NCBI GenBank assembly: GCA_002269645.1
Contig: NIVC01002107.1
Span: forward strand, 1-44,052
Direction: 5' to 3'
Source: Macrostomum lignano
Taxonomy: Eukaryota
DNA: 44,052 nucleotides
Of the stretch, positions 1,595-44,052 are shown piece after piece. How positions within the stretch are numbered: the stretch's first letter is position 1; the number at the start of each line of letters is the position of its first letter. The notes under the pieces were generated by a model. It made no database searches. It worked only from the letters and a program-made list of their open reading frames with translations, and had not been told where the DNA came from. A program made the position numbers and the translations under genes.

Positions 1595-2975
1595 GCGGTG
1601 AGGAGGCACCCAACATGGACCACGTACGGCGCACATCGTCGCAGTTCCAAAGAAGCCGTAGGCACCACGAGGCTTGAGGAGCATCGAGGTATCTGCCTTC
1701 AGTCCTGCGCTGCGAAGTTTTTCAACCGGATGCTGTTATCGCGGTTGCAGCCTAGCCGCAGAACGACTTCCGGCCCCATCGCGGCACAGTGACGCAGATC
1801 CTGGCTCTTCAGCGAGTCATCGAGGAAGCACGGATGCGGCAGTCGATCCTGATTGTTATCTTCATAGATTTCAAGAAGACATTCGACTCGGTGGTCGGCT
1901 CTGTGCTCCCAAAGGCGCTCCGTGCGTACAACGTGCCAGAGCAGCTGATTTCCGCCATCATGGCGATGTACCGCGATACGAAAGCTGCTCTTTCAACACC
2001 GGACGGCCTATCGGACTTTTTTGAAAAATTCTCCGGGGTGCCTCAGGGAGATACGCTTGCACCGTTCCTGTTCGCTCTGGTGCTTGACTGGTACGTGCTG
2101 CACGCACGGATCGCTCTTACGACGACGGCTTTCTGTTGCGGCGACGCGTGGGTCGACGTCAACCGGAGAGGCGGCTCAGCGTGCTTGCCTACGCTGGCGA
2201 TCTCGCGGCCTGCTGTCCTCAACTGTCGAGCCCAGCGACAACTGTGCAAGCTATACTACTAGTTGCTGTTGCGGCGAGTGTCGGCCTGGTGGTCAACACG
2301 CAGAAGACCGTCGTGCTCTGCGTGCCGGACGACATCGAGGCTGAAATTTTGTGAGAGGCGCTATAATGGACAGGCAACAGAGCTTCCGCGTTTTCAGCAG
2401 TTCATCTACCTCGGCGGTCTGGTTTCCGCCGTCCGCGAGGATTTGCGGCGTCGCCGCGGGCTTGCCTGGGCTAGCTGCCTTTCGTTCTGTGAAGGCAGTC
2501 CTGCAGTCCGAGGCTGTAACTGACCGCCAAAGGGTGGCGTTGTTCCAGGCGGTGATCGAGACCGTTCTGCTGTACAACGCCGAGACCTGGACGCTGAAGG
2601 AGTCGCTGGCCTGCTGGTCTGCTGCGCGCAGCCTTTAAAATCGGTTTTACGAGTGAGTGACCAACGCGGCTTTGTATCACCGCGTCGGCCTGGTGTCTGT
2701 CCCATGCAGCGACCTGTTGCGCCGTCGGCGCCTCCAGCTGGCAGGCCGCATCATCCGCGCCGAGTCGTACTGCCCAGAGCCGGTGCAGGAGGTGCTGCTG
2801 CTAACGCTGCAGGCACCCTACCGGCGGGGGCAGGCGCGCACTCGGCGTTTCATCGACTGCCTGCTGGCTGACGCCGGCGCCCCGGATTCGGCCGGCGGCG
2901 TGGCGTTCATTCGCGACCGGGGCTTGAGGCGCGCCCTGTGACGCTGAACGCGTATTCTGTTTTTGTTTTTTTGTT
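1595..2975 (+). mobile_element. 5'-truncated, frameshifted non-LTR retrotransposon (RTE-like reverse transcriptase remnant)
   Basis: RT motifs appear in order across several frames: AHIVAVPKKP, HRGICLQSCAAKFFNRMLL, IFIDFKKTFDSV, GVPQGDTLAPFLF, LAYAGDL (degenerate YADD), GLVVNTQKT, FIYLGG, LFQAVIETVLLYNAETWTL, then an RTE-type C-terminus (RRRRLQLAGRIIR) and a T-rich 3' end. Confidence 0.9.
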
Positions 2976-3659: not shown

Positions 3660-4490
3660 ATGCAGTCAAACATCATCATCTGGATAAGTTTCCTTTGCGG
3701 TCTCGCAGCGCTTCTGGCTGTCGCAGCTGCGGAGGTGCCCAGGCCGGCTGTCCGGTTCACCGCGGCCTGGACGGGCAGCGCTGTCGCTCCGCCGGAGTTT
3801 CTATCGCAGCCCGGACTCAGCGAGCGCAGCTGCGGCTTCATGTGCAGCCACAGGCCGGACTGCTTCGGCTTCTACTGGCTGCTCGGAGCGTGTCGGCTGT
3901 TCGACCTGCAGGCGTTTTACGATGCCAGCGCCTGGGTCAGCACCGGCAAGTGCGACGTCTTCGTGCTGGGTGCGTTTCTGGTGCTTTCGCTCACTTTGGT
4001 TCTTTTTTGTTAATATGACAACTGTTTCTGTAAACTCATTGATTGTATCTTATGAGTAGATACATTTATTGTCTCTCCATCAGATTTCAAGAAGCTGCCT
4101 GCTGCGGACTGCAGCCAGAGCTCAACCAGTCCGAAATGGTTCTACCCATGCAACAGAGCCATCGACGGTAACACGAGCCAGTCTCTGTGGTCCGACTCCT
4201 GCACTCACACTCAGTTCAATGCTAGCGAGTGGTGGGAGGCCGGCCTCACAGCTCCGTCTCTCGTGTCCTTCGTCACCATCCACAACAGGCAGGACTGCTG
4301 CGCTGAGAGGCTCAACAAGTTCGACCTGCTGGTTGACGGGTCCGTGTGCAACCAGGTGAGGCTCAGCGCTCCGTTCTCCGTGGCCAACTTCACCTGCGGC
4401 GCTTTCGGCTCTCGGTTCCGAGTTGTGGCTCGCAGCGACCCGCCAACAGCCCTCACCATCTGCGAGTTCATGGCCTACGGCTTCTTCTGA
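3660..4490 (+). CDS. Secreted PAN/apple-like + F-type lectin (fucolectin) domain protein; exons 3660-3969 and 4084-4490
   Basis: Hydrophobic signal peptide; PAN-like SCGFMCSHRPDCFGFYWLLGACRLF; phase-1 GT-AG intron 3970-4083; exon 2 reads AIDGN..SCTHT..WWEA..VTIHNRQDCCAERL..LTICEFMAYG, which contains the F-type lectin His...R-x-D-x4-R fucose-binding motif. Confidence 0.9.
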
Positions 4491-8709: not shown

Positions 8710-15204
<6,495 letters not shown>

Positions 15205-16020: not shown

Positions 16021-18211
16021 CATTAGGGCCAACCCATTAGGACCAACCCATCAGTACCAACCCATTAGGGCCAACCCATTAGGGCCAACCCATTAGGGCA
16101 ATTACCCAATAGGGGGCCAACCCATTATTAGGGCCAACCCATTAGGGCAAACCCATTTAGGGCCAACCCATTATTAGGGCCAACCCATTAGACCATTAAC
16201 CCATTATTAGGGCCAACCCATTAGGAAACCCATTATTAGGGCCAACCCATTATTAGGGCCAACCCAACCCATTAGGGATTAGAACCAACCCATTATTAGG
16301 GCCAACCCATTAGGCCAATTAGGGCCAACCCAACCAACCCATTATTAGGGCCAACCCATTAGAACCAACCCATTATTAGGGCCAACCCATTAGGACCAAC
16401 CCATTAGGACCAACCCATTATTAGGCCAACCCATTAGAACCAACCCATTATTAGGGCCAACCCACCAAATTATTAGGGCCAACCCATTAGGACCAACCCA
16501 TTAGCACACCAACCCCAACCCATTATTAGGACCAACCCATTATTAGGGCCAACCCATTAGGGCCAACCCATTAGGACCAACCCATTATTATTAGGGCCAA
16601 CCCATTAGGGCAAACCCATTAGGACCAACCCATTATTAGGGCCAACCCATTAGAACCAACCCATTATTAGGGCCAACCCATTAGGCCAACCCATTATTAG
16701 GGCCAGCACAACCCATTATTAGGGCCAACCCATTAGGACCAACCCATTATTAGGGCCAACCCATTAGAACCAACCCATTATTAGGGCCAACCCATTAGGA
16801 CCAACCCATTATTAGGGCCAACCCATTAACCAACCCATTATAGGGCCCATTAGGAACCCATTATTAGGGTAGAACCAACCCATTAGGGGGCCAACCCATT
16901 AGGACCAACCCATTTTAGGGCCAACCCATTAGGGCCAACCCATTAGGGCCAACCCATTATTAGGGCCAACCCATTAGGGCCAACCCATTATTAGGGCCAA
17001 CCCATTATTAGGACCAACCCATTATTAGGGCCAACCCATTAGGACCAACCCATTATTAGGGCCAACCCATTAGGGCCAACCCATTAGGGCCAACCCATTA
17101 GGGCCAACCCATTAGGGCAAACCCATTAGGGCCAACCCATTATTAGGGCCAACCCATTAGGACCAACCCATTATTAGGGCCAACCCATTAGGACCAACCC
17201 ATTATTAGGGCCAACCCATTAGGACCAACCCATTATTAGGGCCAACCCATTAGGACCAACCCATTATTAGGGCCAACCCATTAGGACCAACCCATTAATT
17301 ATTAGGGCCAACCCATTAGGGCAAACCCATTAGGGCCAACCCATTATTAGGGCCAACCCATTAGGACCAACCCATTAGGGCCAACCCATTAGGGCCAACC
17401 CATTATTAGGGCCAACCCATTAGGACCAACCCATTATTAGGGCCAACCCATTAGGACCAACCCATTATTAGGGCCAACCCATTAGAACCAACCCATTATT
17501 AGGGCCAACCCATTAGGACCAACCCATTATTAGGGCCAACCCATTAGGACCAACCCATTATTAGGGCCAACCCATTAGGACCAACCTATTAATTATTAGG
17601 GCCAACCCATTAGGGCCAACCCATTAGGGCCAACCCATTAGGGCCAACCCATTAGGGCCAACCCATTAGGGCCAACCCATTAGGGCCAACCCATTAGGGC
17701 CAACCCATTAGGGCCAACCCATTATTAGGGCCAACCCATTAGGGACCAACCCATTATTAGGGCCAACCCATTAGGGCCAACCCATCATTAGGGCCAACCC
17801 ATTAGGGCCAACCCATTAGGGCCAACCCATTAGGACCAACCCATTACATTAGGGCCAACCCATTAGGGCAAACCCATTAGGGCCAACCCATTATTAGGGC
17901 CAACCCATTAGGACCAACCCACTATTAGGGCCAACCCATTAGCACATTAGGGCCAACCCATTATTAGGGCCAACCCATTAGGACCAACCCATTATTAGGG
18001 CCAACCCATTAGGACCAACCCATTATTAGGGCCAACCCATTAGGACCAACCCATTATTAGGGCCAACCCATTAGGGCCAACCCATTAGGGCCAACCCATT
18101 AGGCAACCCATTAGGGCCAACCCATTAGGACCAACCCATTATTAGGGCCAACCCATTAGGACCAACCTATTAATTATTAGGGCCAACCCATTAGGGCAAA
18201 CCCATTAGGGC
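16021..18211. repeat. Satellite of 14/17-bp units (TTAGGGCCAACCCA, TTAGGACCAACCCA, TTATTAGGGCCAACCCA), about 2.2 kb
   Basis: Directly visible tandem array, often alternating as a 31-bp dimer; there are no unique spacers. Confidence 0.97.
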
Positions 18212-18663: not shown

Positions 18664-19512
18664 TCACACGGAAGCAACGCCGAACGCCTCGAACTCGCAC
18701 AAGTTGATGTCCCGCGGGTGGTAGGTTCTGCGGTTCACAATCCTCACTTGCGAGCCGAACGTGCCGCAGGTGAAGTTGGCCATGGAGAACGGCACGCTGA
18801 CGTTCACCTGCTTGCATTCGGACCCGTCAACGAGGAGATCGAGAGTGTTGAATCTGTCAGAGCAGCAGTCCTGCCTGTTGTGGATGGTGACGAAGGACAC
18901 GAAAGACAGGGCGGCGAGGACGGCCTCCCACCACTCATTCATGTTGTTTCCAGTGTGCGAGCAGGAACCAGCTTGCATATTCGAGTTCGTGTTGCCGTCA
19001 ATGGCCCGCTGGAAGACATTGTCCTGAGCTGTCGAACTCTGGTCGCAGTCGAGAATCTGCAGCTTCTCCAAAGCTGGATTCGGGTCAATAAAGACATGAA
19101 AATTGAAATAATCTGCATTGCATAGGCTTAATACACTTAGTTACATACAATAAGGTTTTGAAAACTTGGGAAGCTTCAAGCAAACTTTTACACCCAAAGC
19201 CTACCTATTACGAAGACCTCGCACTTGCCGGTGCTGACCCAGGCGCTGGCAATGTAAAACGCCTGCATGTCAAACAGCCGACACGCTCCGAGCAGCCAAT
19301 AGAAGCCGAAGCAGTCCGGCCTGAGGCCGCACATGAAGCCGCAGCTGATCTTGTTGGGTCCGGGCAGAGAAGCGAAATCTAGCGAGCGACAGCGCTGCCA
19401 CTGTTGGACTTGGTGAATTTCAGGACCAAGTTGCCGCCCTCAGCAGCAAAGAGAATTGCAAGACAATGGTGCTCATGGCAACCATGAAGTGTATAACAAA
19501 TCTGATGAGCAT
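18664..19512 (-). pseudogene. Second PAN/apple-like + F-type lectin gene (paralog of 3660-4490) with two apparent 1-bp deletions in exon 1; exons 19512-19205 and 19073-18664
   Basis: Exon 1 encodes SCGFMCGLRPDCFGFYWLLGACRLFDMQAFYIASAWVSTGKCEVFVI, close to paralog 1, with the same phase-1 intron position. Exon 2 has AIDGN, CSHT and TIHNRQDCCSDR. The frame breaks near 19459 and 19384. This is either a pseudogene or an assembly error. Confidence 0.8.
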
Positions 19513-22362: not shown

Positions 22363-23843
22363 ATGCGCCACTTGCTTCTGATCTCCCTGCTTCTTGGCGT
22401 GACAGCTCATCGTCTCAATGCTGCCGGCAGCGCAATCTGGCGGCGAGTGCAGCTCAACCTGACTGAGTACCGAACTCTGCAAGTTTTCCCCAGCAGTAAG
22501 CTCATCGAGTGCCTGACTGCTGCCACTGCCGACACCGACGCCGTGCTGTTCGCTGAGCAGACGGGGCTGTGCAGCCTCATGAGCTGCCCGAAGGGCCGGC
22601 TGGGCTGTCAGAAATGTCGGCATTTCAATCAACCGGACCTGCCGCCGTCCGTCTGGGTGAGTTCGACTCACCGAGTTTCCAGTTCTCGCCTTCAAAAACT
22701 TGATGATGAGATGAACAAGCACACTCCAGCTGCCTTTTCTTTGAGATACCGAAACAAAACATGATAATATTAATTAGAGACTTAGCGAGCAATTCTAGCT
22801 GAGATATCAAGGCTCAAAGTTGATAATTCTTGATATCAGACCTATTTCTTTCCTGCTTTTTGCACATTTAATTTCTAAGAAAGTAAGCATAGCATTACGT
22901 TTTTTAATAAGGAGCTTTTTGGGTATTTTTTTCTTTGTTGTCTCCCCAACGGGGGCTACAACTGCTATTCCAATGAACAAATTTCGCTCTATTAAAAAAA
23001 TTAAGGACCACTGTAGCATCAGGTCCAGGACGCAAAAGTTTCAATCGAAGAGAACTCATTGGACAGTCCGATTTTAATCTCGAGTTTGCACATTGACTTC
23101 ATTTGATTCTTGGAAGCATTCGAAGTTAGGATTTTTTACTGCATGGAAAACTAAAGTAAAAGGAGGCAATATCTCACCTGGACTTTAGCTGGTCATTCGA
23201 GCCATCTTACTGTCGAATCCGTTCGCTTTATCATCTAACGCAGATTCGAGCATCTCAGAGTCGCGTCACTTGCTGGAGAACCTTCCAGCACAGGGTTGAC
23301 GGCTCGCTGAGCTTCAACCGCAACTGGGCCGCGTACGTCAGCGGCTTCGGCCAGACCGAGCACGCCAACTTCTGGATGGGCCTGCAGCCGCTGCACCTTC
23401 TGACTCTGGACGGCACTCGGCGACTCCGGTTTGAGTTCGGCGACTGGGACGGCAACTGGTACTGGACGGAGAATCCCAACTTCACGGTAGCTGGCTCAGC
23501 CGACAATTACCGAGTCAGGATCGGGCCACTCGATGCCAGCAGGTCCAGCGTGCCCCAGTACAACCGCGGCTCTATGTGGAATATCCACAACTTTCAGTTC
23601 TCCACTCCTGATCAGGACAATGACGTGGCTGCAGTGAACTGCGCCTCCCTGCGCTCGGCTGGCTGGTGGTACGGCTACTGCAACTCCTTCAACCCCAACG
23701 GAATCTACTATGCGCCTCCGTTTCCGCCGGGCTTCGACTCCAGCTACTCACCTCTGTACTATTTCTACGACGGCTCCACGACCCCGCTCGACATGGACTA
23801 CTCCATGCAAACTGTCGAGTGCCTGGTCGAGGATACACCTTGA
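22363..23843 (+). CDS. Secreted fibrinogen-related domain (FReD) protein with an N-terminal PAN-like module; exons 22363-22656 and 23244-23843 (alternative acceptor at 23259)
   Basis: Signal peptide MRHLLLISLLLGVTA; phase-0 donor TGG|GTGAGT; acceptor CTAACGCAG|; exon 2 reads FQHRVDGSLSFNRNW..GFG..FWMG, FSTPDQDND, CASLRSAGWWYGYCNSFNPNG, all fibrinogen C-domain motifs. Confidence 0.88.
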
Positions 23844-26873: not shown

Positions 26874-28308
26874 ATGCAATGTTTTACATGTAAATGCTCT
26901 GTGGTCGGCGACAAGGGCGTTGGAAAAACCAGTATGATCATAACTTCTGCAACCAGCCAGTTTCCATCGGAGTACGTGCCGAATACGTGCGACCCCAAGG
27001 AAATCACAGGAAAAATTGGTACAGAGGACTTCATGCTGCAATTAATTGACTTGCCGGTGCCACTGGAATACGACAGGTAAATCGAGTGCAACTGATCAGC
27101 TAAAATACAACTTTAAAACCTCTTCTTATTAAAAGCCTGAAAGAAATCCACTTATAGCGGCCCGCAGGGCTGGCCATAGACTATAAGTTAGCTGCCAGTT
27201 CAGCAGCACTCATCGATGTCTTTGGCTGTACATCAGACTGTACACTGCATGATAATTCATCTTGCTTTGCATACTTTCTACTTTCCACTTCAGATTGCGT
27301 CCTCCCGCGTATCCCAGCTACGACGGCTACCTGATCTGCTTCTCGGTGATCGACCCGGCGTCATTTGAAAATGTGGAAACCAAATGGTTGCGAGAGGCTC
27401 CGAGTTACATCTACAATAGCAGTACTCCATTCGTCCTGATTGGCACCAAGGCAGATTTGAGGACAGACCCGGATGTGGTTGAGAAACTGGCAAAGAATGG
27501 AAGTGCGCCGGTCACCTTCAAGCAGGGAACAATGTTGGCTAAGAAGACTAAAGCTCTCAAGTACATTGAATGCAGTGCGCTGACACACGTGAGTGCCATT
27601 CTCTAAATATTCTGCAGGTGCTGGCGCCTCTGGTGCTGGCGCCTCTGGTGCTGGCGCCTCTGGTGCTGGCGCCTCTGGTGCTGGCGCCTCTGGTGCTGGC
27701 GCCTCTGGTGCTGGCGCCTCTGGTGCTGGCGCCTCTGGTGCTGGCGCCTCTGGTGCTGGCGCCTCTGGTGCTGGCGCCTCTGGTGCTGGCGCCTCTGGTG
27801 CTGGCGCCTCTGGTGCTGGCGCCTCTGGTGCTGGCGCCTCTGGTGCTGGCGCCTCTGGTGCTGGCGCCTCTGGTGCTGGCGCCTCTGGTGCTGGCGCCTC
27901 TGGTGCTGGCGCCTCTGGTGCTGGCGCCTCTGGTGCTGGCGCCTCTGGTGCTGGCGCCTCTGGTGCTGGCGCCTCTGGTGCTGGCGCCTCTGGTGCTGGC
28001 GCCTCTGGTGCTGGCGCCTCTGGTGCTGGCGCCTCTGGTGCTGGCGCCTCTGGTGCTGGCGCCTCTGGTGCTGGCGCCTCTGGTGCTCCTAGAGGTCGTA
28101 GATAGAAGGTTGACTGCTTAATTCCAAGAATTAATTAAATCCAAACTAATCTAGACAGGTTGAAACTGTTGCAACATTGCTGTAATAATCAGCAATTAAA
28201 TTCAAATTGCAGGAAAATCTGGCATCTCTCCCTACGGAACTTGTCAGCGCTCTCCAGGAACAGTATCTCAAAAGGACCAAGAAGAAGAGAGAATGTCAAG
28301 TTCTGTAA
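26874..28308 (+). CDS. Atypical Rho-family (Rac/Cdc42-like) small GTPase; exons 26874-27076, 27294-27588, 28213-28308
   Basis: KCSVVGDKGVGKT P-loop, FPSEYVP, YDRLRP, ICFSV, FENV..KW, LIGTKADLR (G4), YIECSALT (G5); the last exon ends in polybasic KRTKKKRE plus CAAX CQVL; splice phases 2 and 0 match. Confidence 0.9.
27617..28087. repeat. Perfect 15-bp minisatellite (TGGTGCTGGCGCCTC), about 31 copies, inside intron 2 of the Rho-like gene
   Basis: Directly visible; no variant units seen. Confidence 0.98.
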
Positions 28309-30088: not shown

Positions 30089-30817
30089 TTCAAGGGCTCC
30101 CTTGTCACGACACAACACCCGCAATGCTATTTTCCTGCAGTGCCACGCAACAGATTGTGTCTAACTTAGGGACGCGCAGCACCACTATTTTATTCGTTCT
30201 ATGCGCTGATCGATCGATTTCTACCTTCCAAGTACGTATTTGCATAAACCTATAGTTGCATAAACCTATAGTTTCCCTCATATATGAGTGCTCAAGTGGA
30301 GGCTAGGCTTGTAAATGTTAGGCAATTGGGACTGCCACCTGTGCACCCCTCTACCTGTCCGTCCGTCCCCCAAACTTTATCTCTCTCTTTTTCTCAGTAG
30401 GCGACACCTGATCACCCCTGGCACTACTATCTTTAACATAGCCACCGATCTCTCCAGTAGTTGAACTAGCCATGGAATTTCCACGGAATTTCCTGCAGTC
30501 GGGTTCCACTAACTCTCACCAGTTAACTACATGTGGCAGACTGGTGGAGAGAGGGGAGGGGCAAAAGATTGGCCGATATATTTGCCCTGGTAACTAATTA
30601 TTTTAACTAAGACTGCTGGAATTTTGTTTCCGATAGCTAGCTGGTCTGGATTTTATGCCCTAAGCATTAACTTATCTTAGCACAGCGAGTCTGTAAGTGT
30701 TTAAAGCATTACGAGCTACAAACGATAATCTTCGAATTCACAGCAAATAAATGGTTTCAACGAAATACCTTGCCAATTAAGAAAACTGCGTCAAGTAAGT
30801 TTTTCACGCATATAATT

Positions 30818-33800
30818 ATGTTCAATCGTGCTCGAAACTTCCTGGAAAGCAAAATAGAAGATATTTTGGAGAAGAATGCAGCAGAAAATGCAGTCAAAGC
30901 TGCTGCCAGTGGTACAAGAGAAGATCTGGAAAAATATTTGCAAAAGATTTCGGACAGAGACAGCTCGGACAAGTGTTGCACGGAGGCGACAAAAGCTGCA
31001 GCCTGCAGCAGCCAATGGCCACGGAGAAGTTGTCGCTGCTCTGATGGAATTCTTTTTCGACGAAAGCAGTAAAGTTAGTTGTTGTGCGGAAGCAGCCTGG
31101 ATCGCTGCAGGAAATCAGCACTGGAATGTTGTGACTTTTTTGGTGCAAAGCATCTCTGACGAACAACTGCGAGATGACTTCTGTTCATCTTACATAAAGG
31201 CCGTTTCGGAAAACGCTGGCACAACAGACGAAACTTTTGAAGACGCTCCTGCACTTGCAAATAACGATCTTTTTAACCATGAGCTCATTATTTTTCTAGC
31301 AGGTACAATTAGCGATGGGCAACTCAAAGATCAATACTGCATGGACGCTGCAGAATCTGCGTCCAGCCATGGCAATATGAACTGTGTGGCCTCTCTTGGG
31401 CAGATGATTTCTGATTCGGACGGCCGGGATTCTTTCTGCATCTCCTATGCAGAGCAATCTGCTGCATCCAATTGCTTGGAAGCAGCTACTTCGCTTTTAA
31501 GAAATATTTCTAATCCAGCACTTAGAGATAAAAAATGCATCGATTTTGCTGAATCCTTTGTATTATCTGGCAGTTGGGATATCGCGAAGTCTCTAGTTGA
31601 GCTGATCGCTGACCCCAGTCGCAGGTATCTGTGCTGCATGAAGCTTGCAGACTTAGCACATTCATCTGCTCAGTGCGAAGATCTGGTTTTTCTGGCTCTA
31701 ACCATTGAAGACAAAAACATGAGGGATCAGTGCTGCCTGAAAGCAGTAGAAATCCTTGCAGACAGAAACGAATGGAATGAAGTGAAAACTTTCATTGAGA
31801 TCATTGACGATCAAAGCATTCTCGAAAGTAGCTGCATGATAACTGCAGGGGCTGCAGCAGATACGAAAAACTGGGATGTTGTCGCGACTGTCGGCAAGTA
31901 TATTCCTTCCAGCATGTTGCTGAAAGACGAGTACTGGAGGTCCGCGACGGAGACTGTTGCAGAAAAGATGGATATCCGCAGACTCAACGAGTTTCTTGTG
32001 TCCACTGCTTCAAAAGCCGGAGTCGGGGTCAGTTCCGATCTTTATTCCTCAAGCTCGGACGGAACAGCAGTGGCAGCCATTCCAGCTGACTGGCTGCTCC
32101 GCAACTCTCCACTGCTGAAGCTGCTCTCTCAGCACCTGGAGATTCCTGGTGACGATTCAGTTTTACGATATACGCTGTCTAAAATGCATGCCGTTCGCAT
32201 CGCTCAACTGCTCTGCCTGTCCATCACGCACAGTCTTGTCGCACTGGCACTCACGATAATCAGAAGCCAATACTATAGCGACACGCATGTCGATCAGCAG
32301 AATAGCACAGGAGCAACCGCTTTAATGCTGGCAGCAGATGCGGGTCAGCACGACGTCATCAATGAATTGTTACTTCACGGTGCGTCTGTGAGGGCTGCAG
32401 ATGGCCAAGGTCGGACGGCTCTGTCTCGAGCGTGCATAGCGGGCCATGTTTTATCTGCCAAGGTTCTGATAAACGAAGGAGCAGACCCAAGTCATCAAGA
32501 TCACCAAGGCATGACATGCGAGCAGCTGGCTAATCAATATCATAACTACCAAGTGCTTCCGGTGCTGCAAAATGGGTGCGTCTTTTAATCAATATATATA
32601 TTTCTTTTTTTCTGAACGTCGATGCAAATTCATAGACTACGAAAGGGCACTACACCTTTTTTCATTCAATTTCAACCAAAGTCGGCATTCAATTTCAGCA
32701 AGCTGGCATTCAAAATCGGCAATCTAAATTAGCCAACCAAATCTTCATTCAATTTAAGCATGCTCGCATTCCATATCAGCGAACCACATTCAGCGAACTG
32801 CATTCAATTCAATTTTGTCTCAAACTTGTCTGCTCGTCTATGGGTAAACTTTATTGACGCGTGCAGATTTTGCACTCAATTTCGGCAATCTGCATTCAAT
32901 TTCAGCAAAACACATTCGATTTCAACCACAGACGAATGTTCAATTCCATGTACAGTTTACATCCAAAGAGGCTTTGTCGATCCTTTCATTTCACTTCACC
33001 CCAGCTTTCTGTTTTTTTTACTGCAAGTGTAGATATCGAGCATAGATATGAGTGACAATGAGATCATTAAAGAACAAGCTGACGAAGAAATTGAGTCAGA
33101 AGAAGAAGAAGGTCGAGGACCAAACGCACGAGTTTCTGACAGAGATAGAGCCCGCCTTATCGATGCCCACGAGACAGGGCAGGACTATTTACAACTTGCA
33201 GAGCTCATGAACATCAATGGGGACTGAAGGGCCACACTTGACGTGACTTCGATTTTCTGTTTTTGTTCCCTATGACACTGTACATGTATTGGACGACGTT
33301 CGTTTTGTTTTACGTTAAGTTAATAAAATTTTGCTGAATTTGAATGCAGATTGCCGAAATTGAGCGCAAAATCTGCACGCGTCAATAAAGTTTACCCATA
33401 GACGAGCAGACAAGTTTGAGGCAAAATTGAATTGAATGCAGTTCGCTGAATGTGGTTCGCTGATATGGAATGCGAGCATGCTTAAATTGAATGAAGATTT
33501 AGATGGCTAATTTAGATTGCCGATTTTGAATGCCAGCTTGCTGAAATTGAATGCGACTTTGGTTGAAATTGAATGCAAAAAGATGTAACAAGTCGTGAAA
33601 ATTTCACTGGAGGCCGGTTTTGTTCTGGTAATGTTGTTTCTCTCGACCAAGTTTGTCTATGGTAAAGCTCTATTTAATGTATGCAATGCAAGAGCAAAAT
33701 CCTTGCGAAATCCGTTTAGACAAGCAACCATAGCTAACATGCTTGCAACGAAAATTGGCCCCAATGAAATTCAGGAAATTTTTTGAGTTTCACTCATCCT

Positions 33801-35979
33801 CCTTCTTACAATGTCTTCCATGTACAAAAACGAATTTAAGTGTTTTAAAATTAATTTTGTGCTTTTAGAACTTCGGAAAACACGACAATGGATGTTTTGC
33901 GTCAACAAACTCGGTAAGCGATTCGGAGGTTGTCTAAATGCATTGTCCTGGTGCCAAAACCATAGACACAATCTACTATTGAGAGCATGTTTCTAAGAAA
34001 ATTTTGCTTCTGTTTTTTTAAATACGATCGTATGTGTTACTGAATATTTAGCTTTAACAAATTTAGAAACAGAGAGCTAAGTCGGAGTTGGCACCAGCAG
34101 CTTACCCAGGCAGGATTCAGTCTGCGCAGGGCAAAGTGTCAGCAAGTACTGGGTCGCACTCTGCAAACGCTGGTTCAAAGCTCTTCAGATGGTCAGAGGC
34201 AGATGACTGGCAGCTACCGAGAAGGCTGGGGGAACAGTCTCGTGCAGGTGAACGGCAGAGTAGGGGCTCAATCCGACATCGACTGGACTACGATGGACTC
34301 TAGACAAGTAACTCACCTGAAAGGAGGCTGCCAAAGGTCTGAAAATTGCAAAAATTCTCCACTGCTTCAGGTTAGAGAAGGCCACGCTCAGGTGCAAGCT
34401 GGATCGGGTAAGTTTTGCCCAGCTTATCAGTAACGCTTGCTTGTGCTCTGTTAAACCTTACAACTTTAATAGTCAAGCCGCAACGAAGATCAAAGACTGA
34501 TTTAAAGTACTAACTGAGCCCTGGCAACAATTCGACTAAGGTATAAACTCTTGTTGTCTCTTTTCAGGCAGCCAGCCGGCGATGACGACCCTAGCGAGCG
34601 GTGTTCGACCCACAGAAGACATCTGCGAAGCTATCCAATGTTGCAGCGACTTCTGTCAGGACCGAATTGCAAAGCTTCTTCCTAACCGAGATCTGCCCCC
34701 AGTGCACCTCGTTAGAGCGACTCGACCCAACTCGCCGAACGAACTCAGAGTGAGTTTCAGCTTCCATGAAAAAGAAATCTTGGAGAGCGTAAGCGAAGTA
34801 CAAGGCCAACTTTTCGTCATCTTGAAATACATATTTAAGATATACATGCCCATCAATTTGCAAACACCGGGTCTCAAGACCTACCACGCCAAGACTTTGC
34901 TCCTGTTCATGCTGGAGAAGCAAGGCAAAGATAGCAGCGTTTGGCATTCGGTGGAGAACTTGGTCGATCTGCTAAATGAATCGCTCGACACGATGCTAAG
35001 CTTCGTTGCTTCCGGCAGCTCGCCTGATGTCTGCATGCCGCACTTCTTCATGCCTGACGCTCCGTTGTACTTCAAAAATGCTGGAGTCGGAGGTGACTTA
35101 GTCAACACAAGGACAAAAGTTTCGGACCAACTCAGAGAGATTAGAAGCAATATAAGACAGGTGTATGAGGCAATGAAAGAACAGATGATGTCTCTACAGT
35201 CGGAGGACTTCTACTTTCACCCGTTCACTTTGCTACCTCTAACCAGAAAAGTAGAAAAACCTTTTCAAGCCACACAACCTGCAGATTCATCCATTGCGGT
35301 CTACTGCATGGTGAACCAATGCATGGTTGATCTGCAGTCAGAAGCAACTGACAAGGACGAGCTAATGGAACAGCTTAATATCCTGGATCAGCTTCAGTGG
35401 TGTAAATGCGCAGTCTTGTGCATGAAAGTCATGGCGCATTTGAAATCCGAGGATTCTGCACAGGCTGACATCCTCCTGAAGAAGCTGCAATCGCATCAAG
35501 TGCAGAGAGGTTGGAAGCCTGAAAACCTTCTGAGTAAAGACTTTTTCGATATTGAGGAAGACTGGGCGTGGAGGTTTTGCCTCCCCTGCGACAGTCCGCC
35601 TCGACTGCCGTTCCTCCCTGAGTTCACTCAGACTCTGTTGAAAGCCAGACTGTCGCAGCCTGGCTCCGCCCACCTGTACGTGAATTTTCGCTGCCTGAGC
35701 TGGAGTCTCCAAGCTGAGCTTCTACGAGATCTTCCAATCGACATTTTTGACGAGTGGCGTGTTGAACTGCAAGAAGACCAGGATTTAGAGGAGCTTCTTA
35801 CCCTGGCCCACTACAGCCAGTCGTTGGAACACTGGGAATTCTGCAGGCACCAAATCGAGACCATAATCTCTGAGAAACGCGTTACCCTGGATGGCGACGA
35901 ACTTCGACTCGTCCTTGACAAGCTTTCACCAATAAGTAGATTCGAATATTTAACAAACAAAAAGTCTGATATTGGATAG
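30818..35979 (+). CDS. cGAS-like receptor (Mab-21/cGLR nucleotidyltransferase) with N-terminal 33-aa helical repeats and ankyrin repeats; exons 30818-32575, 34067-34407, 34568-35979; one +1 frameshift near 31000
   Basis: Splice phases match (GG|GT..AG|A phase 2; G|GT..AG|GC phase 1). Exon 1 has ankyrin repeats (GATALMLAA, GRTALSRAC). Exon 2 has the NTase signature TGSYREGW..SDIDW. Exon 3 has QPAM..EDICEAIQC, LRVSFSFHEKEIL, LKTYHAKTLLLFMLE and CMPHFFMP, all typical of Mab-21 folds. Confidence 0.85.
32653..33585 (+). mobile_element. Internally deleted Tc1/mariner-like transposon with TIRs of about 257 bp, in intron 1 of the cGLR gene
   Basis: TA TSD (32651-32652 and 33586-33587); near-perfect TIRs 32653-32910 and 33329-33585 containing repeated CATTCAATT motifs; an internal 59-aa ORF at 33048-33227 (RVSDRDRARLIDAHETGQDYLQLAELMNIN) resembles a transposase N-terminal helix-turn-helix. 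Confidence 0.8.
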
Positions 35980-37786
35980 CATTCAGTTGGGATTTTTTTT
36001 ACATGATTTAGAAATAACTTAAGGAAAGACTATTAGGCTTTATTGTACAAGTCACCCTGGGTTCATCATTATTACAGGTGCAAGGCAAAAATTTAAGGCA
36101 GGAAGGGCGATATCAATAGAATACAAAATCTTTATTTTAGCTCGTATGAATATAAACTGTTCTAATAATCCTTATCAACACTAGAAAAGAAAACTGTGAC
36201 TTTATGTGAATCGATTTTAAATAAGGAGAAAATGTTAATGTGGCATGTGAGTTGCATAATTGCTGGACATTATCGCACATTCAAGTCTGATTGATTAAAT
36301 CTTGACCAAAGCTAAATTATAAAAAATATAAAAAGGAAGTCAACCGAAGGCATGTCTTTCTAGGCTCCTACAATAAGTTTATTCCTTTTTTGACTGAAAA
36401 GAAATAATAGCGCTGTACTTATATAGTTTATTCGAATGACAATTATATGCAATCGTTTTTGTCTTAAAACTGTTTTTCTCATGTGCCTCAATTTTGGTAC
36501 GAGCTTCTGTCCAGCGCATTCGGTTCTCTAATCATGTATATTGTAAAGTACAAATATGCTGTGCAAAACCTGCAACTGCATGTATTAATTTTTTTTGAAA
36601 AGTGCGTTTTGATTTGATATCCCTTATCCGGATTAGATGCATATCCTTGCGTGTAGTTTTATTATACTACGTTTTAACGTCCTCCATGTACGTTCGTAGT
36701 ATTGGCTGGACGTGAAAAATCCATCAATTATATATAGGGCGGTCGCGATATTGAATGTTTCAAATAAAGCTGACTGTCAAGGACTACTAAAGTACTCGTA
36801 GAAGGACGCAACACTCGAAATTTATCGAAAATGTTTTGAAGGCCACTTTTTGCCGAAAAATACACTACGGAGATGGGAAATTTTAATTTTTAAGCAAAAA
36901 ATTGTTATTGCGTTCGATAGGAGGCAGATCCAACTTTAATATTCTGAAATGTTGTGCCTTTCTTATAGCTCCATTCATATATAAAGCTTTTGGTTCAAAA
37001 AATAGGATTCATGTTAATCCTTTATTCTACGTACATTTTCTGCAACTAAAAATCATAAAAATCATGGTTTTATGAATCTATCTTATCATCTCCGTTACAC
37101 ATATTGTTACCCAGATAGCTAAGAATAACAAAATAGATTCATAAAACCAATGAGCTGTGCCGTGCCATTTTAATGGTTTTTTGGGCAATTGACTCACCCG
37201 ATTTCTCACTACCGGTGTCTCACCTGACTGACTGACTGAAAGAATATAAGATATAATGTATGTGATAGGGAATTCCATTAGTCCATAGAGAAATCTACTA
37301 TCCCATTCTACTGAATTACTCGTACTTTCAATGAAGTACCACTGGGTGACGAATTGAATCACGACAGAATAATTAGTTGAGAATTGAAAACGAGCAATGC
37401 GTGTACTTACAGAAAGCAGAAGTAAAAGCAGATATTTGAGACGCGTTGAAACAAACAACACAAGGCTTTTAGGCCGAAAGGAAGGAGAATTCATAAAAAC
37501 TGCCGAACGCCACACTGCGATGCCTCGCATGATGTGAAAAAGCAGGCGCTGGGGAGCAGTGATACAGCGCGGAGTCTGCAAGCCGCTCCCAGTAAACAGT
37601 TTGCAGTGTCGCTTTGGCAACAAAGTAGCGAAAAATGCCGAATCAAACAATTGAGCATCCCCATTGCCGCGCCTGCCATCCCAACCGTTGATTTAGAGAA
37701 AATTCAAAAAAGACGACAGCCCAAGCAGGTAGCAAGAGACAGAAGCAACAAGCCTACTCGTTTCTAAATCTGCACAGCCGCTGACA

Positions 37787-38630
37787 ATGCAGGCCTCATC
37801 AATTCTGTCGCTTCTCTGCTGCTGCGTCGCTTTCGGCTGCTCGCTGGGCGCCGAATTCGGCCTGGTGGGCTGCTTCGTGGACACCGAAACTCGAGACCTC
37901 GGCGGACTCGAAGGCAGGTCCACCATCGGGCCGTACTCGGTGTCTCACCTGAAAGGTTCATTTGTCGACCTCAGCGAGATGACTCTGGAACTGTGCAGCG
38001 AGATTTGCGCCTATGGAAACTTTGAGTACTTTGGCGCGCAGTATGCAAGCGAATGCCGCTGCGGAAACTCCTATGGCATCCACGGCCAGGCTGCCAACAG
38101 CGACTGCAACATGAACTGCGCCGGCAACTCTGCCCAAATCTGCGGATCAGCTTGGAGAAACTCCGTGTACCGGCAGGTCTACCTTCGTCCAGGTGAGTTC
38201 AATTGTTCTAACAGTATTTATTGATTTGTCATGAGAAAGTAAACTCAGAGTATGAGCAAGCTAGCGTCAAAGCCGATTTAAACTTTGATACGCTCGTACA
38301 CGTCACACGTCACGACACACAGTGCAATGCTAACTGAATTCTGATGGCTCACTGGGTCAGTATCACCGGAATTGCTGTGAACTCTCTCTGTCCCTAACAG
38401 TCAGCGGATACTTCACTTTTGCTGATCGAGTCTACCTGAACATGACCTCCTCCAGCGGGCCCTTCTACCGCACCGTGCAGCCCGTGATGGGCCTGAATGA
38501 GTGCCTGGTTCGTTGCCGTGCCGACTGCCAGGCCGTGCTGTTCCACCTGAACGCTTGCTACCTGCTGAGATTCGCCGCTGTGCCGCACGAGCTGAGGGCC
38601 GTGGCTGGAGATTTCGCCGTTCGCTTGTGA
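37787..38630 (+). CDS. Secreted WSC-domain + PAN/apple-like protein; exons 37787-38192 and 38401-38630
   Basis: Signal peptide; WSC motifs VGCFVD..MTLELCSEIC..YFGAQYASECRCGN..CNMNCAGNSAQICG..NSVY; phase-1 intron; exon 2 has ECLVRCRADCQAVLFHLNACYLL. Confidence 0.88.
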
Positions 38631-43525: not shown

Positions 43526-43900
43526 TCAAAAAATTCTGAGTTGTTGCTCTATACCTTTACTCACAAGCTGAACATTTAAGCTAGGATTGTACTTCCTAAT
43601 GTATGTAGCCTCCAACGATTTTAGTTTTCTATCATTGTTACATCCATCCATCACCTTGAACAACTGCATAGGCTCACAGTCACAACACGCCTTGCACACG
43701 AATAGGTGGTCTTTAATGGCCAAAGACCTAAGCCAGTGCTCCCTTACCCTCTGGTGTAGATGCCGTTTAGTTTTTCCAATATAGGAAACACCCTGATCAA
43801 CAGAGCATTGAAATTGATAGACGACACCAGCCTTAAGTGGGAGAAGAACACTAGATTTGAGTCTGCTTGCATAGCGCGCAATCTTTTCAGTCCTGAACAC
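43526..43900 (-). mobile_element. Penelope-like element GIY-YIG endonuclease fragment (no RT visible)
   Basis: GVVYQFQC..SYIGKTKRHLHQRVREH..LEATYIRKYNPSLN matches the Penelope endonuclease motif order; the DNA upstream on the minus strand is non-coding AT-rich sequence. Confidence 0.85.
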
Positions 43901-44052
43901 AACTCTAGAAAATGCTTCTAGAAAACTGAAAACTATTGCAAAATTAAAGGAATATAACTAAAGGTAGTAAATACAATGGAATATAAATATATTTCTGGTA
44001 GAGTAGCTCGCTTAATAAATAAAGATAAAAAGAATGAAAACAAACATATTGA

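What the first reader, a model, noticed from the sequence alone, without database searches (positions are those of the whole stretch)
30818..35979. Hidden multi-exon cGAS-like receptor: helical-repeat solenoid + ankyrin + Mab-21 nucleotidyltransferase
Seen in sequence: three pieces that look unrelated in the ORF track (an ankyrin ORF, a 76-aa ORF and a 465-aa ORF) splice in matching phases into one protein of about 1170 aa. Exon 2 carries GSYREG and SDID, and exon 3 carries a candidate third acidic residue (EDIC) plus Mab-21 lobe motifs. Established: in cGAS, cGLRs and CD-NTases the G[S] motif with D-x-D and a third acidic residue catalyses cyclic dinucleotide synthesis after ligand sensing. 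Inference: this is a probably active innate-immune second-messenger synthase whose long repeat N-terminus may act as a built-in sensor or autoinhibitory module. I do not recognise this exact architecture from characterised cGLRs.
Basis: partly seen in the sequence, partly recalled or inferred. Interest (0 to 1): 0.92.

Follow-up and report, generated by a model that had tools for sequence, protein, structure and literature searches.

The report
Frameshifted flatworm ankyrin–cGLR gene copy
This is an unannotated three-exon gene of the flatworm Macrostomum lignano encoding ankyrin repeats fused to a cGAS-like nucleotidyltransferase; it is one copy of a very large, already catalogued family, and this copy has a frameshift near its start, so it is probably a young pseudogene and not a new kind of immune sensor.

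Summary
The three ORFs do splice in matching phases through canonical GT..AG sites. The product is collinear with about 90 or more paralogous loci in the same 764-Mb genome, and all named protein hits are Macrostomum lignano. The C-terminal half folds as a cGAS/cGLR nucleotidyltransferase. Evidence: AF2 pLDDT 84; Foldseek top hits human cGAS, MB21D2 and Cv-cGLR1; Pfam Mab-21_C. G48-S49, D70-x-D72 and D131 are intact, and D131 aligns with the invariant third Asp of mollusc cGLRs.

1. The ATG at 30818 is not in the frame of the ankyrin ORF. A 7-bp tandem duplication (CTGCAGC, 30996-31009) shifts the frame after codon 62. Two other contigs share it, and two sister copies lack it but carry other lesions.
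2. The "helical solenoid" is eleven divergent 33-residue ankyrin repeats.
3. The ANK–cGLR architecture, and members of this family, are already in Li et al. 2023. Five M. lignano proteins were cloned for that paper's screen, and none is flagged among its 15 active enzymes.

No near-identical annotated protein exists. No STING domain was found, but that search is inconclusive.

Verdict: a real gene model, a new and probably disabled member of a known kind. Interest is low to moderate.

The parts
30818..31002 (+). Original start codon and first 62 codons (MFNRAR...TEATKAAA), covering the first one and a half ANK-like repeats. In the window this frame runs into a stop at 31070-31072.
   Evidence: In the sister copy C1020 the same ATG frame continues uninterrupted into the ankyrin ORF.
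30996..31009 (+). 7-bp tandem duplication CTGCAGC|CTGCAGC, giving a +1 frameshift after codon 62.
   Evidence: DNA alignments. Present in the window, C616 and C4752. C1020 has a single copy, and the C284 ORF reads TKAAAANGHG, which implies a single copy there too.
30848..32009 (+). Eleven divergent 33-residue ankyrin-type repeats (consensus I-x-D-x4-D-x2-C-x3-A-x2-AA-x7-V-x2-L). The fourth repeat carries a 19-residue insertion.
   Evidence: Strict 33-aa register. A profile of nine of the window's own repeats hits DARPins and consensus ankyrin at E 1e-8 to 1e-4. BLASTP to the N-terminus of paralog P0015 gives E 1e-28. AF2 shows helix pairs, and Foldseek top hits are AnkB, ankyrin-1 and DARPin arrays over ~600-700 columns.
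32277..32501 (+). Canonical ankyrin repeats at the end of exon 1.
   Evidence: Pfam Ank_2 62.9 bits (cut-off 27.3) and Ank 46.7 bits.
32576..34066 (+). Intron 1 (GT..AG, phase 2). It contains a ~870-bp TIR transposon remnant at 32685-33554.
   Evidence: Splice sites. The 226-nt inverted arms are 98% complementary. At least 46 matches in the genome. Paralogous loci have an intron at the same protein position.
34067..34407 (+). Exon 2: N-terminal spine helices and first strands of the NTase core, with G48-S49 (34209-34214) and S69-D70-I71-D72 (34272-34283).
   Evidence: Identical in all three copies aligned.
34408..34567 (+). Intron 2 (GTAAGT...ttttcag, phase 1). Its position is conserved in most paralogs.
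   Evidence: Exon-3 matches of paralogs start at the same residue.
34568..35289 (+). Exon 3, first part: the rest of the NTase core with the third catalytic Asp D131 (34618-34620), and the Mab-21 C-terminal lobe (Pfam PF20266 at 34819-35067).
   Evidence: Pfam 28.6 bits against a cut-off of 24.1. PDB profile hits are cGAS, cGLR1 and MAB21L1, plus one negligible designed protein at E 1.9. hhalign to mollusc cGLRs has prob 98.5. AF2 and Foldseek support the fold.
35290..35979 (+). Exon 3, second part: a ~230-residue family-specific C-terminal domain, mostly helical with a small sheet, and the stop codon. The last 15 codons (35930-35976) are a frameshifted tail caused by a 1-bp deletion between 35929 and 35930.
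   Evidence: Conserved in all paralogs. AF2 pLDDT is about 90 over residues 360-540. No Pfam family found. The deletion is seen against C616 and C1020.
30876..30878 (+). An ATG in the post-frameshift frame. It is the only way this copy could still give a near-full-length (~1150 aa) product, by leaky scanning past ATG 30818.
   Evidence: Translation of ORF 30858..32588 begins KIFWRRMQQKM.... Use of this start is inferred, not shown.

Best explanation
The locus is one copy of a very large, Macrostomum-restricted family of ankyrin-repeat–cGAS-like receptor (cGLR) genes.

The intact archetype has four parts in order:
- about 11 divergent plus about 5 more canonical ankyrin repeats;
- a Mab-21/cGAS-fold nucleotidyltransferase with a complete G-S / D-x-D / D active site;
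- the Mab-21 C-lobe;
- a ~230-residue family-specific helical domain.

By analogy with cGLRs (inferred, not shown), the enzyme would hold two NTPs and two Mg2+ on the acidic triad. It would make a cyclic or linear oligonucleotide signal when a ligand or partner is bound, with the ankyrin solenoid as the recognition or regulatory surface.

The copy in this window is most likely a young pseudogene or null allele. A 7-bp tandem duplication shifts the frame after codon 62, so translation from the native ATG ends after 84 codons. The gene is absent from the public protein sets searched. Its closest copies each carry their own frame-breaking lesions, as expected in a birth-and-death immune gene family.
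For: Gene model:
- Canonical splice sites, matching phases and an open joined frame.
- Collinearity with paralogs.
- Conserved exon boundaries.

Family:
- 53 protein hits, all named Macrostomum lignano, best identity 58%.
- At least 89 scored loci out of 652 first-look candidates in the window's own genome.
- 144 Mab-21_C hits over the cut-off.
- Only 138 clusters at E<1e-3 among 1.84 billion representative proteins. All seven strong hits sampled were M. lignano.

Fold and active site:
- Pfam Mab-21_C.
- PDB profile hits are cGAS, cGLR1 and MAB21L1, plus one negligible hit at E 1.9.
- AF2 pLDDT 83.9 and pTM 0.86, with GS after strand 43-47, D70/D72 at the head of strand 71-84 and D131 in strand 130-138.
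- Foldseek top hits are human cGAS at E 1.3e-6, MB21D2 and Cv-cGLR1.
- D131 aligns with the invariant Asp of mollusc cGLRs.
- The triad is lost together in P0052, P0037 and P0046.

Ankyrin nature of the N-terminus.

Disablement:
- Frame break.
- The duplication is shared by three contigs and absent from two sister copies.
- C1020 has a different 1-bp deletion, and the C284 copy has several lesions.
- No protein at 90% identity or more in either length range.
- omega 0.48, not significantly different from 1.
Against: - An ATG at 30876 lies in the post-duplication frame and could still give a ~1150-aa protein lacking only the first one and a half repeats.
- Apart from the indels the ORF is clean: no stop in 3.4 kb, exon 2 identical in the three copies aligned, and all catalytic residues intact. 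If this is decay, it is very recent.
- omega is below 1.
- Small indels in a long-read assembly can be errors. The 1-bp events at 35929/35930 and in C1020 are of that kind, although the 7-bp duplication seen in three contigs is not.
- No transcript data could be consulted.
- No enzymatic activity has been shown for any family member. The five M. lignano constructs in Li et al. 2023 are not flagged among the active enzymes.
- No STING ligand-binding domain was detected in the genome.
Confidence: 0.6

Rival explanations
1. The copy is still a working gene. Ribosomes skip ATG 30818 or reinitiate, and start at ATG 30876 or 30888 in the post-duplication frame. Alternatively an upstream or trans-spliced 5' end is used. 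Either route gives a ~1150-aa ANK–cGLR whose first ~44 residues are new sequence.
For: - ORF 30858..32588 contains ATGs at 30876 and 30888 and is open to the exon-1 donor.
- The catalytic motifs and the whole 3.4-kb frame are otherwise intact.
- Three assembled copies keep the same allele without further damage.
- omega is 0.48.
Against: - ATG 30818 comes first, has A at -3, and opens an 84-codon ORF that overlaps the downstream starts.
- No annotated protein or cluster member is near-identical to any part of the product.
- The sister lineage (C1020, C284) is also accumulating frame breaks, which points to relaxed selection on this subclade.
Confidence: 0.25
2. The family proteins are not second-messenger synthases. 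They would be Mab-21-fold scaffolds or pseudo-enzymes like MAB21L1 or MiD49/51, or nucleotidyltransferases with another chemistry such as linear 2'-5' oligoadenylates or protein nucleotidylation. The ankyrin array would then serve as a protein-interaction platform.
For: - Pfam's Mab-21 NTase model (PF03281) does not hit; only the C-lobe model does.
- There is a family-specific ~10-residue insertion between the GS motif and the DxD strand.
- TM-scores to cGAS are modest, at most 0.53.
- MiD51 and MiD49 also appear in the fold hits.
- None of the five M. lignano constructs is flagged as active in Li et al. 2023.
- No STING_LBD match was found in the genome, although the same method finds 144 Mab-21_C loci.
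Against: - G48, S49, D70 and D72 are invariant or nearly invariant across paralogs, and D131 is kept in most. Paralogs that lose one acidic residue lose the others too, which is the pattern expected for a used active site.
- Known pseudo-enzymes of this fold lack the triad (established knowledge; Li et al. 2023 say this of Mab21L1/2/3).
- The best structural matches are active cGAS and cGLRs.
- Many genuine cGLRs are inactive in vitro without their unknown ligand (Li et al. 2023, Limitations section).
Confidence: 0.2
3. The frame breaks are assembly artefacts, and the animal carries an intact ~1155-aa gene.
For: - The 1-bp differences lie in or beside short homopolymers: CACCCAAT against CACCAAT at 35929/35930, and GATCTTT against GATTTT in C1020. 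Long-read assemblies are prone to such errors (general knowledge).
Against: - The 7-bp event is a clean tandem duplication of a non-homopolymer word. It is identical in three separate contigs and absent from two diverged copies. That is the signature of a real inherited mutation.
- The three contigs could be redundant haplotigs built from the same reads, so they are not fully independent.
Confidence: 0.1

Closest known systems
Macrostomum lignano ANK–cGLR proteins in the cGLR catalogue of Li et al. 2023 (PMC9980059), e.g. PAA68676.1 (BOX15_Mlig016402g1 = P0005) and PAA93208.1
   Same: - Same order of parts: ANK-like repeats, canonical ANK, NTase core, Mab-21_C, then the C-terminal helical domain.
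- 55-59% identity over the NTase half.
- The motifs MTGSY.EGW, SDIDW, RP..D.C, VHLVRATRP and ELRVSFSF are shared.
- Same intron positions.
   Different: - The window gene belongs to a small divergent subclade (about 60% identity to the rest).
- Its repeats are more degenerate.
- It starts MFNRAR, not MGQNQS.
- It is unannotated.
- It carries a frameshifting 7-bp duplication.
Bivalve/mollusc cGLR expansions (Crassostrea, Mizuhopecten sequences of Li et al. 2023, Table S3)
   Same: - Profile-profile match with prob 98.5 and E 2e-15 from the third catalytic Asp through the Mab-21 C-lobe.
- Shared motif style: TGSxxEG[FW], SDxD, and WR[IL]SF against LRVSF.
- Lineage-specific mass expansion.
   Different: - The mollusc proteins shown have no ankyrin array.
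- They lack the ~10-residue insertion between GS and DxD.
- They have extra segments between the third Asp and the C-lobe.
- Identity is only ~23% over the aligned part.
Human cGAS, MB21D2 and Cv-cGLR1 (solved structures 9c8n, 6lrc, 7lt1, 8gjw)
   Same: - Best structural matches of the AF2 model (E 1e-6 to 1e-4, TM up to 0.53 on the target).
- Same order of spine helix, GS loop, DxD strand and third-Asp strand.
- They are also the meaningful sequence-profile hits in the PDB.
   Different: - 14-17% identity.
- No cGAS-type Zn thumb at the cGAS position.
- Additional ~580-residue ANK N-terminus and ~230-residue C-terminal domain.
- Ligand and product are unknown.
ANK- and death-domain-fused cGLRs of the coral Stylophora pistillata (Li et al. 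2023)
   Same: The cGLR core is fused to ankyrin repeats. The authors interpret these as protein- or ligand-interaction modules.
   Different: These come from a different phylum and probably arose by an independent fusion. No sequence comparison was done here.
MAB21L1/2 and MiD49/MiD51 (inactive Mab-21-fold proteins)
   Same: Same fold. The genome also has three canonical Mab-21 loci scoring 102 bits.
   Different: Those proteins lack a functional acidic triad (Li et al. 2023; established knowledge). The window protein keeps GS, DxD and D.

Membership tests
cGAS-like receptors (cGLR; Mab-21/cGAS-fold CD-NTases of animals) | Bilobed Mab-21/cGAS nucleotidyltransferase fold | tested here: met
   - Pfam Mab-21_C 28.6 bits against a cut-off of 24.1.
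- PDB profile hits are cGAS, cGLR1 and MAB21L1, plus one negligible hit at E 1.9.
- AF2 pLDDT 83.9 and pTM 0.86.
- Foldseek top hits are cGAS, MB21D2 and Cv-cGLR1, E 1e-6 to 1e-4.
- The N-lobe Pfam model PF03281 gave no hit.
cGAS-like receptors (cGLR) | Catalytic G[S/G] motif, [D/E]-h-[D/E] on the next strand, and a third acidic residue | tested here: met
   - G48-S49, D70-I71-D72 and D131 are present.
- G48 and S49 are invariant, and D70 and D72 at least 90% conserved, in 22 sequences.
- D131 aligns with the invariant Asp of mollusc cGLRs.
- The triad is lost together in divergent paralogs.
- Spatial clustering was not measured because model coordinates are not exposed. Only strand positions were read.
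cGAS-like receptors (cGLR) | Synthesis of a nucleotide second messenger, usually ligand-dependent | not testable with these tools
In Li et al. 2023, Table S3, the five M. lignano constructs (#89-93) have an empty field where active enzymes are named.
cGAS-like receptors (cGLR) | A downstream receptor such as STING in the same organism | tested here: inconclusive
   A six-frame search with PF15009 (STING_LBD) found no candidate in the 764-Mb genome. The same method finds 144 Mab-21_C loci. No STING-positive control genome was searched, and an intron-split domain could be missed.
cGAS-like receptors (cGLR) | Intact, expressed coding sequence (needed to call this copy a functional member) | tested here: not met
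   - The native ATG frame stops after 84 codons because of the 7-bp duplication.
- There is no near-identical annotated protein.
- Expression itself could not be tested.
Ankyrin-repeat proteins | Tandem ~33-residue helix-turn-helix repeats matching the ANK profile | tested here: met
   - Pfam Ank_2, Ank, Ank_3 and Ank_4 are over their cut-offs at residues 487-561.
- Eleven further repeats sit in a strict 33-residue register. Their own profile hits consensus ankyrin and DARPins.
- The full-length model matches AnkB and ankyrin-1 arrays.
- The N-terminal repeats are atypical: a ~17-residue first helix and no clear beta-hairpin.
Macrostomum ANK–cGLR family | Collinear ANK + NTase + family-specific C-terminal domain, with introns at the same positions | tested here: met
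   95-99% coverage of the 583-residue C-terminal half at 52-59% identity. The alignments are, and the exon boundaries.

The most novel reading that the evidence does not exclude
The most novel reading concerns the family, not this broken copy. On this reading the several hundred ANK–cGLR loci of Macrostomum are an NLR-like, hyper-expanded receptor repertoire in a phylum otherwise reported to lack cGLRs. Three findings feed it:
- at least 89 loci were scored and 385-652 were first-look candidates;
- some paralogs are fused to caspase or kinase domains;
- all paralogs share an uncharacterised ~230-residue C-terminal domain.
The family would signal without a canonical STING, either through a new nucleotide receptor or directly through the fused effector domains.
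Probability: 0.2. Interest if true: 0.65.

Novelty: new member of a known kind. Interest (0 to 1): 0.3.

Why it matters
This locus adds little by itself. It is one more copy, probably dead, of a gene family whose members are already listed as cGLRs.

The wider context may be worth a specialist's attention:
- The published survey says most flatworms have no cGLRs beyond Mab-21.
- M. lignano is a laboratory model with transgenesis (from memory). It carries one of the largest cGLR-like expansions seen here, all fused to ankyrin arrays.
- No STING domain was detectable with the search used here.
- No family member has a demonstrated product or ligand.

That makes the family a tractable system for asking what cGLRs signal through when STING is absent. 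It also offers a way to study how repeat-domain fusions tune these enzymes. The frame-broken copies document rapid birth-and-death turnover.

Tried and rejected
1. I first suspected that the conserved VHLVRATRP strand held the third catalytic position, with His replacing Asp, which would have made the family inactive. I rejected this. That strand corresponds to cGAS FYLVPK...WRLSFS, just before the C-lobe, and hhalign places the catalytic Asp at D131.
2. A PDB profile search with full-length paralogs (A1) was swamped by ankyrin proteins. I repeated it with a trimmed alignment.
3. The Pfam N-lobe model PF03281 gave no hit at E<=1.
4. The STING_LBD six-frame search found nothing and had no ringing control. 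I treat it as inconclusive. PF20266 served as a control of the method.
5. The look-up of encoding contigs gave nothing for P0005, with a note that records of the window's own genome may be left out. I used the genome search instead.
6. The full-length AF2 model has pTM 0.46 and low confidence in the NTase part. I drew no inference about ANK–NTase packing or autoinhibition from it.
7. One DNA alignment used wrong coordinates for C4752 and was redone.
8. A short intron that could explain the frame change near 31000 was considered and rejected. No GT..AG interval of plausible length exists there, and the sister copies show a simple 7-bp duplication.
9. The dN/dS test between the window and C1020 (17 nonsynonymous, 10 synonymous changes) cannot separate neutral from mildly constrained evolution.

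Full report
**What is there.** The window is eukaryotic DNA. Its assembly (G000) has 764 Mb in 5,269 contigs, and the window is contig C2107. Every named protein homolog is from the free-living flatworm Macrostomum lignano.

The proposed junctions are canonical:
- donor GG|GTGCGT at 32575/32576;
- acceptor tttag|A at 34066/34067;
- donor GG|GTAAGT at 34407/34408;
- acceptor ttttcag|G at 34567/34568.

The frame of ORF 30858..32588 continues through exon 2 into ORF 34540..35979 without a stop. The joined protein is collinear across both junctions with annotated M. lignano proteins. Genome searches with exon 3 and with paralog PAA68676.1 show that paralogous loci break into exons at the same protein positions. 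Exon 3 starts at residue ~464-466 of that protein, and exon 2 covers ~347-468. Some paralogs lack intron 1. The multi-exon gene model is therefore sound.

**What is wrong with the observation.** It lies in ORF 30671..31072, which stops after 84 codons. The three exons as given add up to 3511 nt, not a multiple of three.

DNA alignment with the near-identical copies of the gene explains this:
- The window, C616 and C4752 carry a 7-bp tandem duplication, CTGCAGC|CTGCAGC, at 30996-31009.
- Copy C1020 (98% identical) has one copy of the word. There the MFNRAR... frame runs straight into the ankyrin ORF (...TEATKAAAANGHGEVV...). The ORF of the degraded copy C284 reads the same way.
- C1020 has instead lost one base at the equivalent of window 32040.
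- C284 has several lesions: internal stops and a broken exon 3.
- The window also lacks one base between 35929 and 35930 relative to C616 and C1020. Its last 15 codons (ISRFEYLTNKKSDIG) are therefore a shifted tail, and the sister copies end ...DKLS[P/L]NK*.

Between the window and C1020 there are 17 nonsynonymous and 10 synonymous differences. That gives omega 0.48, with binomial p = 0.10 against neutrality.

No protein at 90% identity or more to any part of the product exists in the 5.8-billion-protein collection, in either length range searched. The gene is unannotated.

**The C-terminal half.**
- *Family hits.* Pfam finds only the Mab-21 C-lobe, at 28.6 bits against a cut-off of 24.1. A profile of the trimmed family hits cGAS (E 9e-5), cGLR1 8gjy (1e-4) and MAB21L1 (0.09) in the PDB, plus one negligible designed protein at E 1.9.
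- *Model.* An AlphaFold2 model of the spliced 583-residue half is confident (pLDDT 83.9, pTM 0.86). Its best structural matches are human cGAS (E 1.3e-6, TM 0.53 on the target), MB21D2 and Cv-cGLR1. Bacterial CdnE, MiD51/49 and DncV follow.
- *Catalytic positions in the model.* G48-S49 follow strand 43-47. D70-I71-D72 open strand 71-84. D131 sits in strand 130-138. This is the order found in cGAS-type enzymes.
- *Third acid.* A profile-profile comparison with seven mollusc cGLRs from Li et al. 2023 gives probability 98.5 (E 2e-15). It aligns TEDICEAIQCC with EIDIAFSFHC, so D131 falls on their invariant Asp.
- *Conservation.* Across 22 family members G48 and S49 are invariant and D70 and D72 at least 90% conserved. 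The few divergent paralogs that lose one acidic residue lose the others too: P0052 has SNVNW and no third Asp, P0037 has CDMNW with E-S, and P0046 has SGIDW with T-S. That pattern argues the site is used in the rest.
- *Differences from mollusc cGLRs.* The family has a ~10-residue insertion between GS-x2-EGW and SDID. It also has a conserved ~230-residue, mostly helical C-terminal domain with no Pfam match.

I could not measure inter-residue distances because model coordinates are not exposed.

**The N-terminal half.** The "helical-repeat solenoid" consists of eleven repeats in a strict 33-residue register, at residues 11-395 of the read-through protein. The fourth repeat has a 19-residue insertion.
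- A profile built only from nine of these repeats hits consensus ankyrin proteins and DARPins, at E 1e-8 to 1e-4.
- The region aligns with the N-termini of paralogs, at E 1e-28 to P0015.
- The conserved domains listed in Li et al. Table S2 call the equivalent region of PAA68676.1 Ank_2.
- The full-length AF2 model shows one long and one short helix per repeat (pLDDT about 80-90). It matches 24-repeat AnkB and ankyrin-1 over 600-700 columns.

Together with the canonical ankyrin repeats at 32277-32501, the whole N-terminal ~580 residues form one ankyrin-type solenoid. The inter-domain arrangement is not reliable (pTM 0.46), so I draw no conclusion about autoinhibition.

**The family and the literature.**
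- The exon-3 protein finds at least 89 loci at E<1e-159 among 652 first-look candidates in the genome. Pfam Mab-21_C finds 144 loci over its cut-off among 385 candidates, and the three best are canonical Mab-21 orthologs.
- An exhaustive phmmer search of 1.84 billion representative proteins finds only 138 clusters at E<1e-3. All seven strong hits sampled were M. lignano. The only sampled hit named from another organism was an annelid protein at E 5e-7, matching over the C-lobe only. Two other weak hits carried no name.
- Paralogs carry variable extra domains: caspase p20, protein kinase, or a second NTase.
- Li et al. 2023 (PMC9980059) state that nematodes and most platyhelminths have no predicted cGLRs other than Mab-21-like proteins. 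They also state that 87% of cGLRs are single-domain and that some are fused to TPR or ankyrin repeats.
- Their Table S3 lists five M. lignano proteins cloned for the biochemical screen, including PAA68676.1 (my P0005) and PAA93208.1. For these rows, the field that names the 15 active enzymes is empty. M. lignano does not appear in their table of cGLR and STING counts.
- The architecture and the family are thus already recorded as cGLRs, but without a demonstrated activity.
- A six-frame search of the genome with the STING ligand-binding-domain model found no candidate. The method works on this genome, but without a STING-positive control I treat the result as inconclusive.

**Most likely explanation.** The locus is a recently disabled copy of a Macrostomum-specific ANK–cGLR gene. 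At best it is an N-terminally altered one.

*Shown here:*
- the gene structure;
- family membership;
- the cGAS-like fold;
- an intact catalytic motif set;
- the ankyrin nature of the repeats;
- the inherited 7-bp frameshift;
- the absence of an annotated product.

*Inferred:*
- Intact family members make a nucleotide second messenger on the D70/D72/D131 triad, and the ankyrin solenoid is the recognition or regulatory surface.
- This copy is not translated into a full-length protein.

The main rival is that translation starts at ATG 30876 or 30888. Those ATGs happen to lie in the post-duplication frame and would give a ~1150-residue protein. A second rival is that the family is not a cyclic-nucleotide synthase at all. 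A third is that the indels are assembly errors. That is plausible for the two 1-bp events and unlikely for a clean 7-bp duplication seen in three contigs.

**Verdict.** This is a new, probably defunct member of a known kind. A moderate interest attaches to the family as a whole: a very large ankyrin-fused cGLR expansion in a tractable flatworm, with no detected STING and no known ligand or product.

Noticed in passing
window 32685-33554 (inside intron 1): A ~870-bp non-autonomous DNA transposon remnant with 226-nt terminal inverted repeats (98% complementary). It contains a short acidic ORF (33048-33227, starting MSDNEIIKEQ...) with no Pfam hit. The arm sequence has at least 46 matches in the genome. 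The insertion is shared by all five copies of the gene, so it predates their divergence.
   Followed up: partly
window 23160-23843 (+), 4056-4490 (+), 18664-19140 (-), 37733-38224 (+): Neighbouring ORFs encode a fibrinogen C-terminal domain (E 7e-34), two F5/8-type-C (galactose-binding-like) domains and a WSC domain. These are lectin-type domains often tied to invertebrate immunity (from general knowledge). No link to the cGLR gene was tested.
   Followed up: partly
window 14227-15204 (+): An exon encoding the transmembrane region of a neurotransmitter-gated ion channel (Neur_chan_memb, E 2e-17).
   Followed up: no
window 1756-2262 (+) and 43526-43957 (-): A reverse-transcriptase fragment (RVT_1) and a GIY-YIG nuclease ORF, presumably retroelement remnants.
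   Followed up: no
window 27617-28087; also L014 8341-9001 (C1020): A perfect 15-bp x 31 tandem array (GGTGCTGGCGCCTCT) lies ~2.7 kb upstream of the gene. A matching repetitive Ala/Pro-rich open frame lies upstream of the C1020 copy, so the duplicated segment extends well beyond the gene.
   Followed up: partly
window 13161-13880 and 16021-18211: A (GTTA)x180 microsatellite and a 2.2-kb satellite with a 14/31/45-bp period (CATTAGGGCCAACC). Both show strong strand skew in base composition.
   Followed up: no
paralogs P0005, P0009, P0010, P0019 (N-termini): Several paralogs begin MGQNQS, MGQNLS or MGQYLS, which is an N-myristoylation-type start (from general knowledge). That would place these cGLR-like proteins on membranes. 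The window gene begins MFNRAR.
   Followed up: no
paralogs P0037/P0038, P0014, P0004: Family members carry other domains: a C-terminal caspase p20, a C-terminal protein kinase, or a second NTase copy. Some of these may be annotation fusions.
   Followed up: no
window 34329-34349 and 34624-34656 (residues C88...C94 and C133, C138, C139, C143 of the NTase half): A conserved cysteine cluster (GGC...C and C-x4-CC-x3-C) sits directly after the third catalytic Asp. It could be a metal site or a disulfide cluster. It does not lie at the position of the cGAS Zn thumb.
   Followed up: no
G000 C401:225579-225872, C402:76422-76715, C835:101338-101631: Three loci with identical, much stronger Mab-21_C scores (102.5 bits). 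They are presumably the canonical Mab-21 orthologs, present in three copies, which fits the redundancy seen for the window gene.
   Followed up: no
protein P0057 (JGI metagenome contig, 3.2 kb): A 467-aa family member, 48% identical to exon 3, comes from a metagenome source and not from the M. lignano records. It may be a related flatworm in an environmental sample.
   Followed up: no
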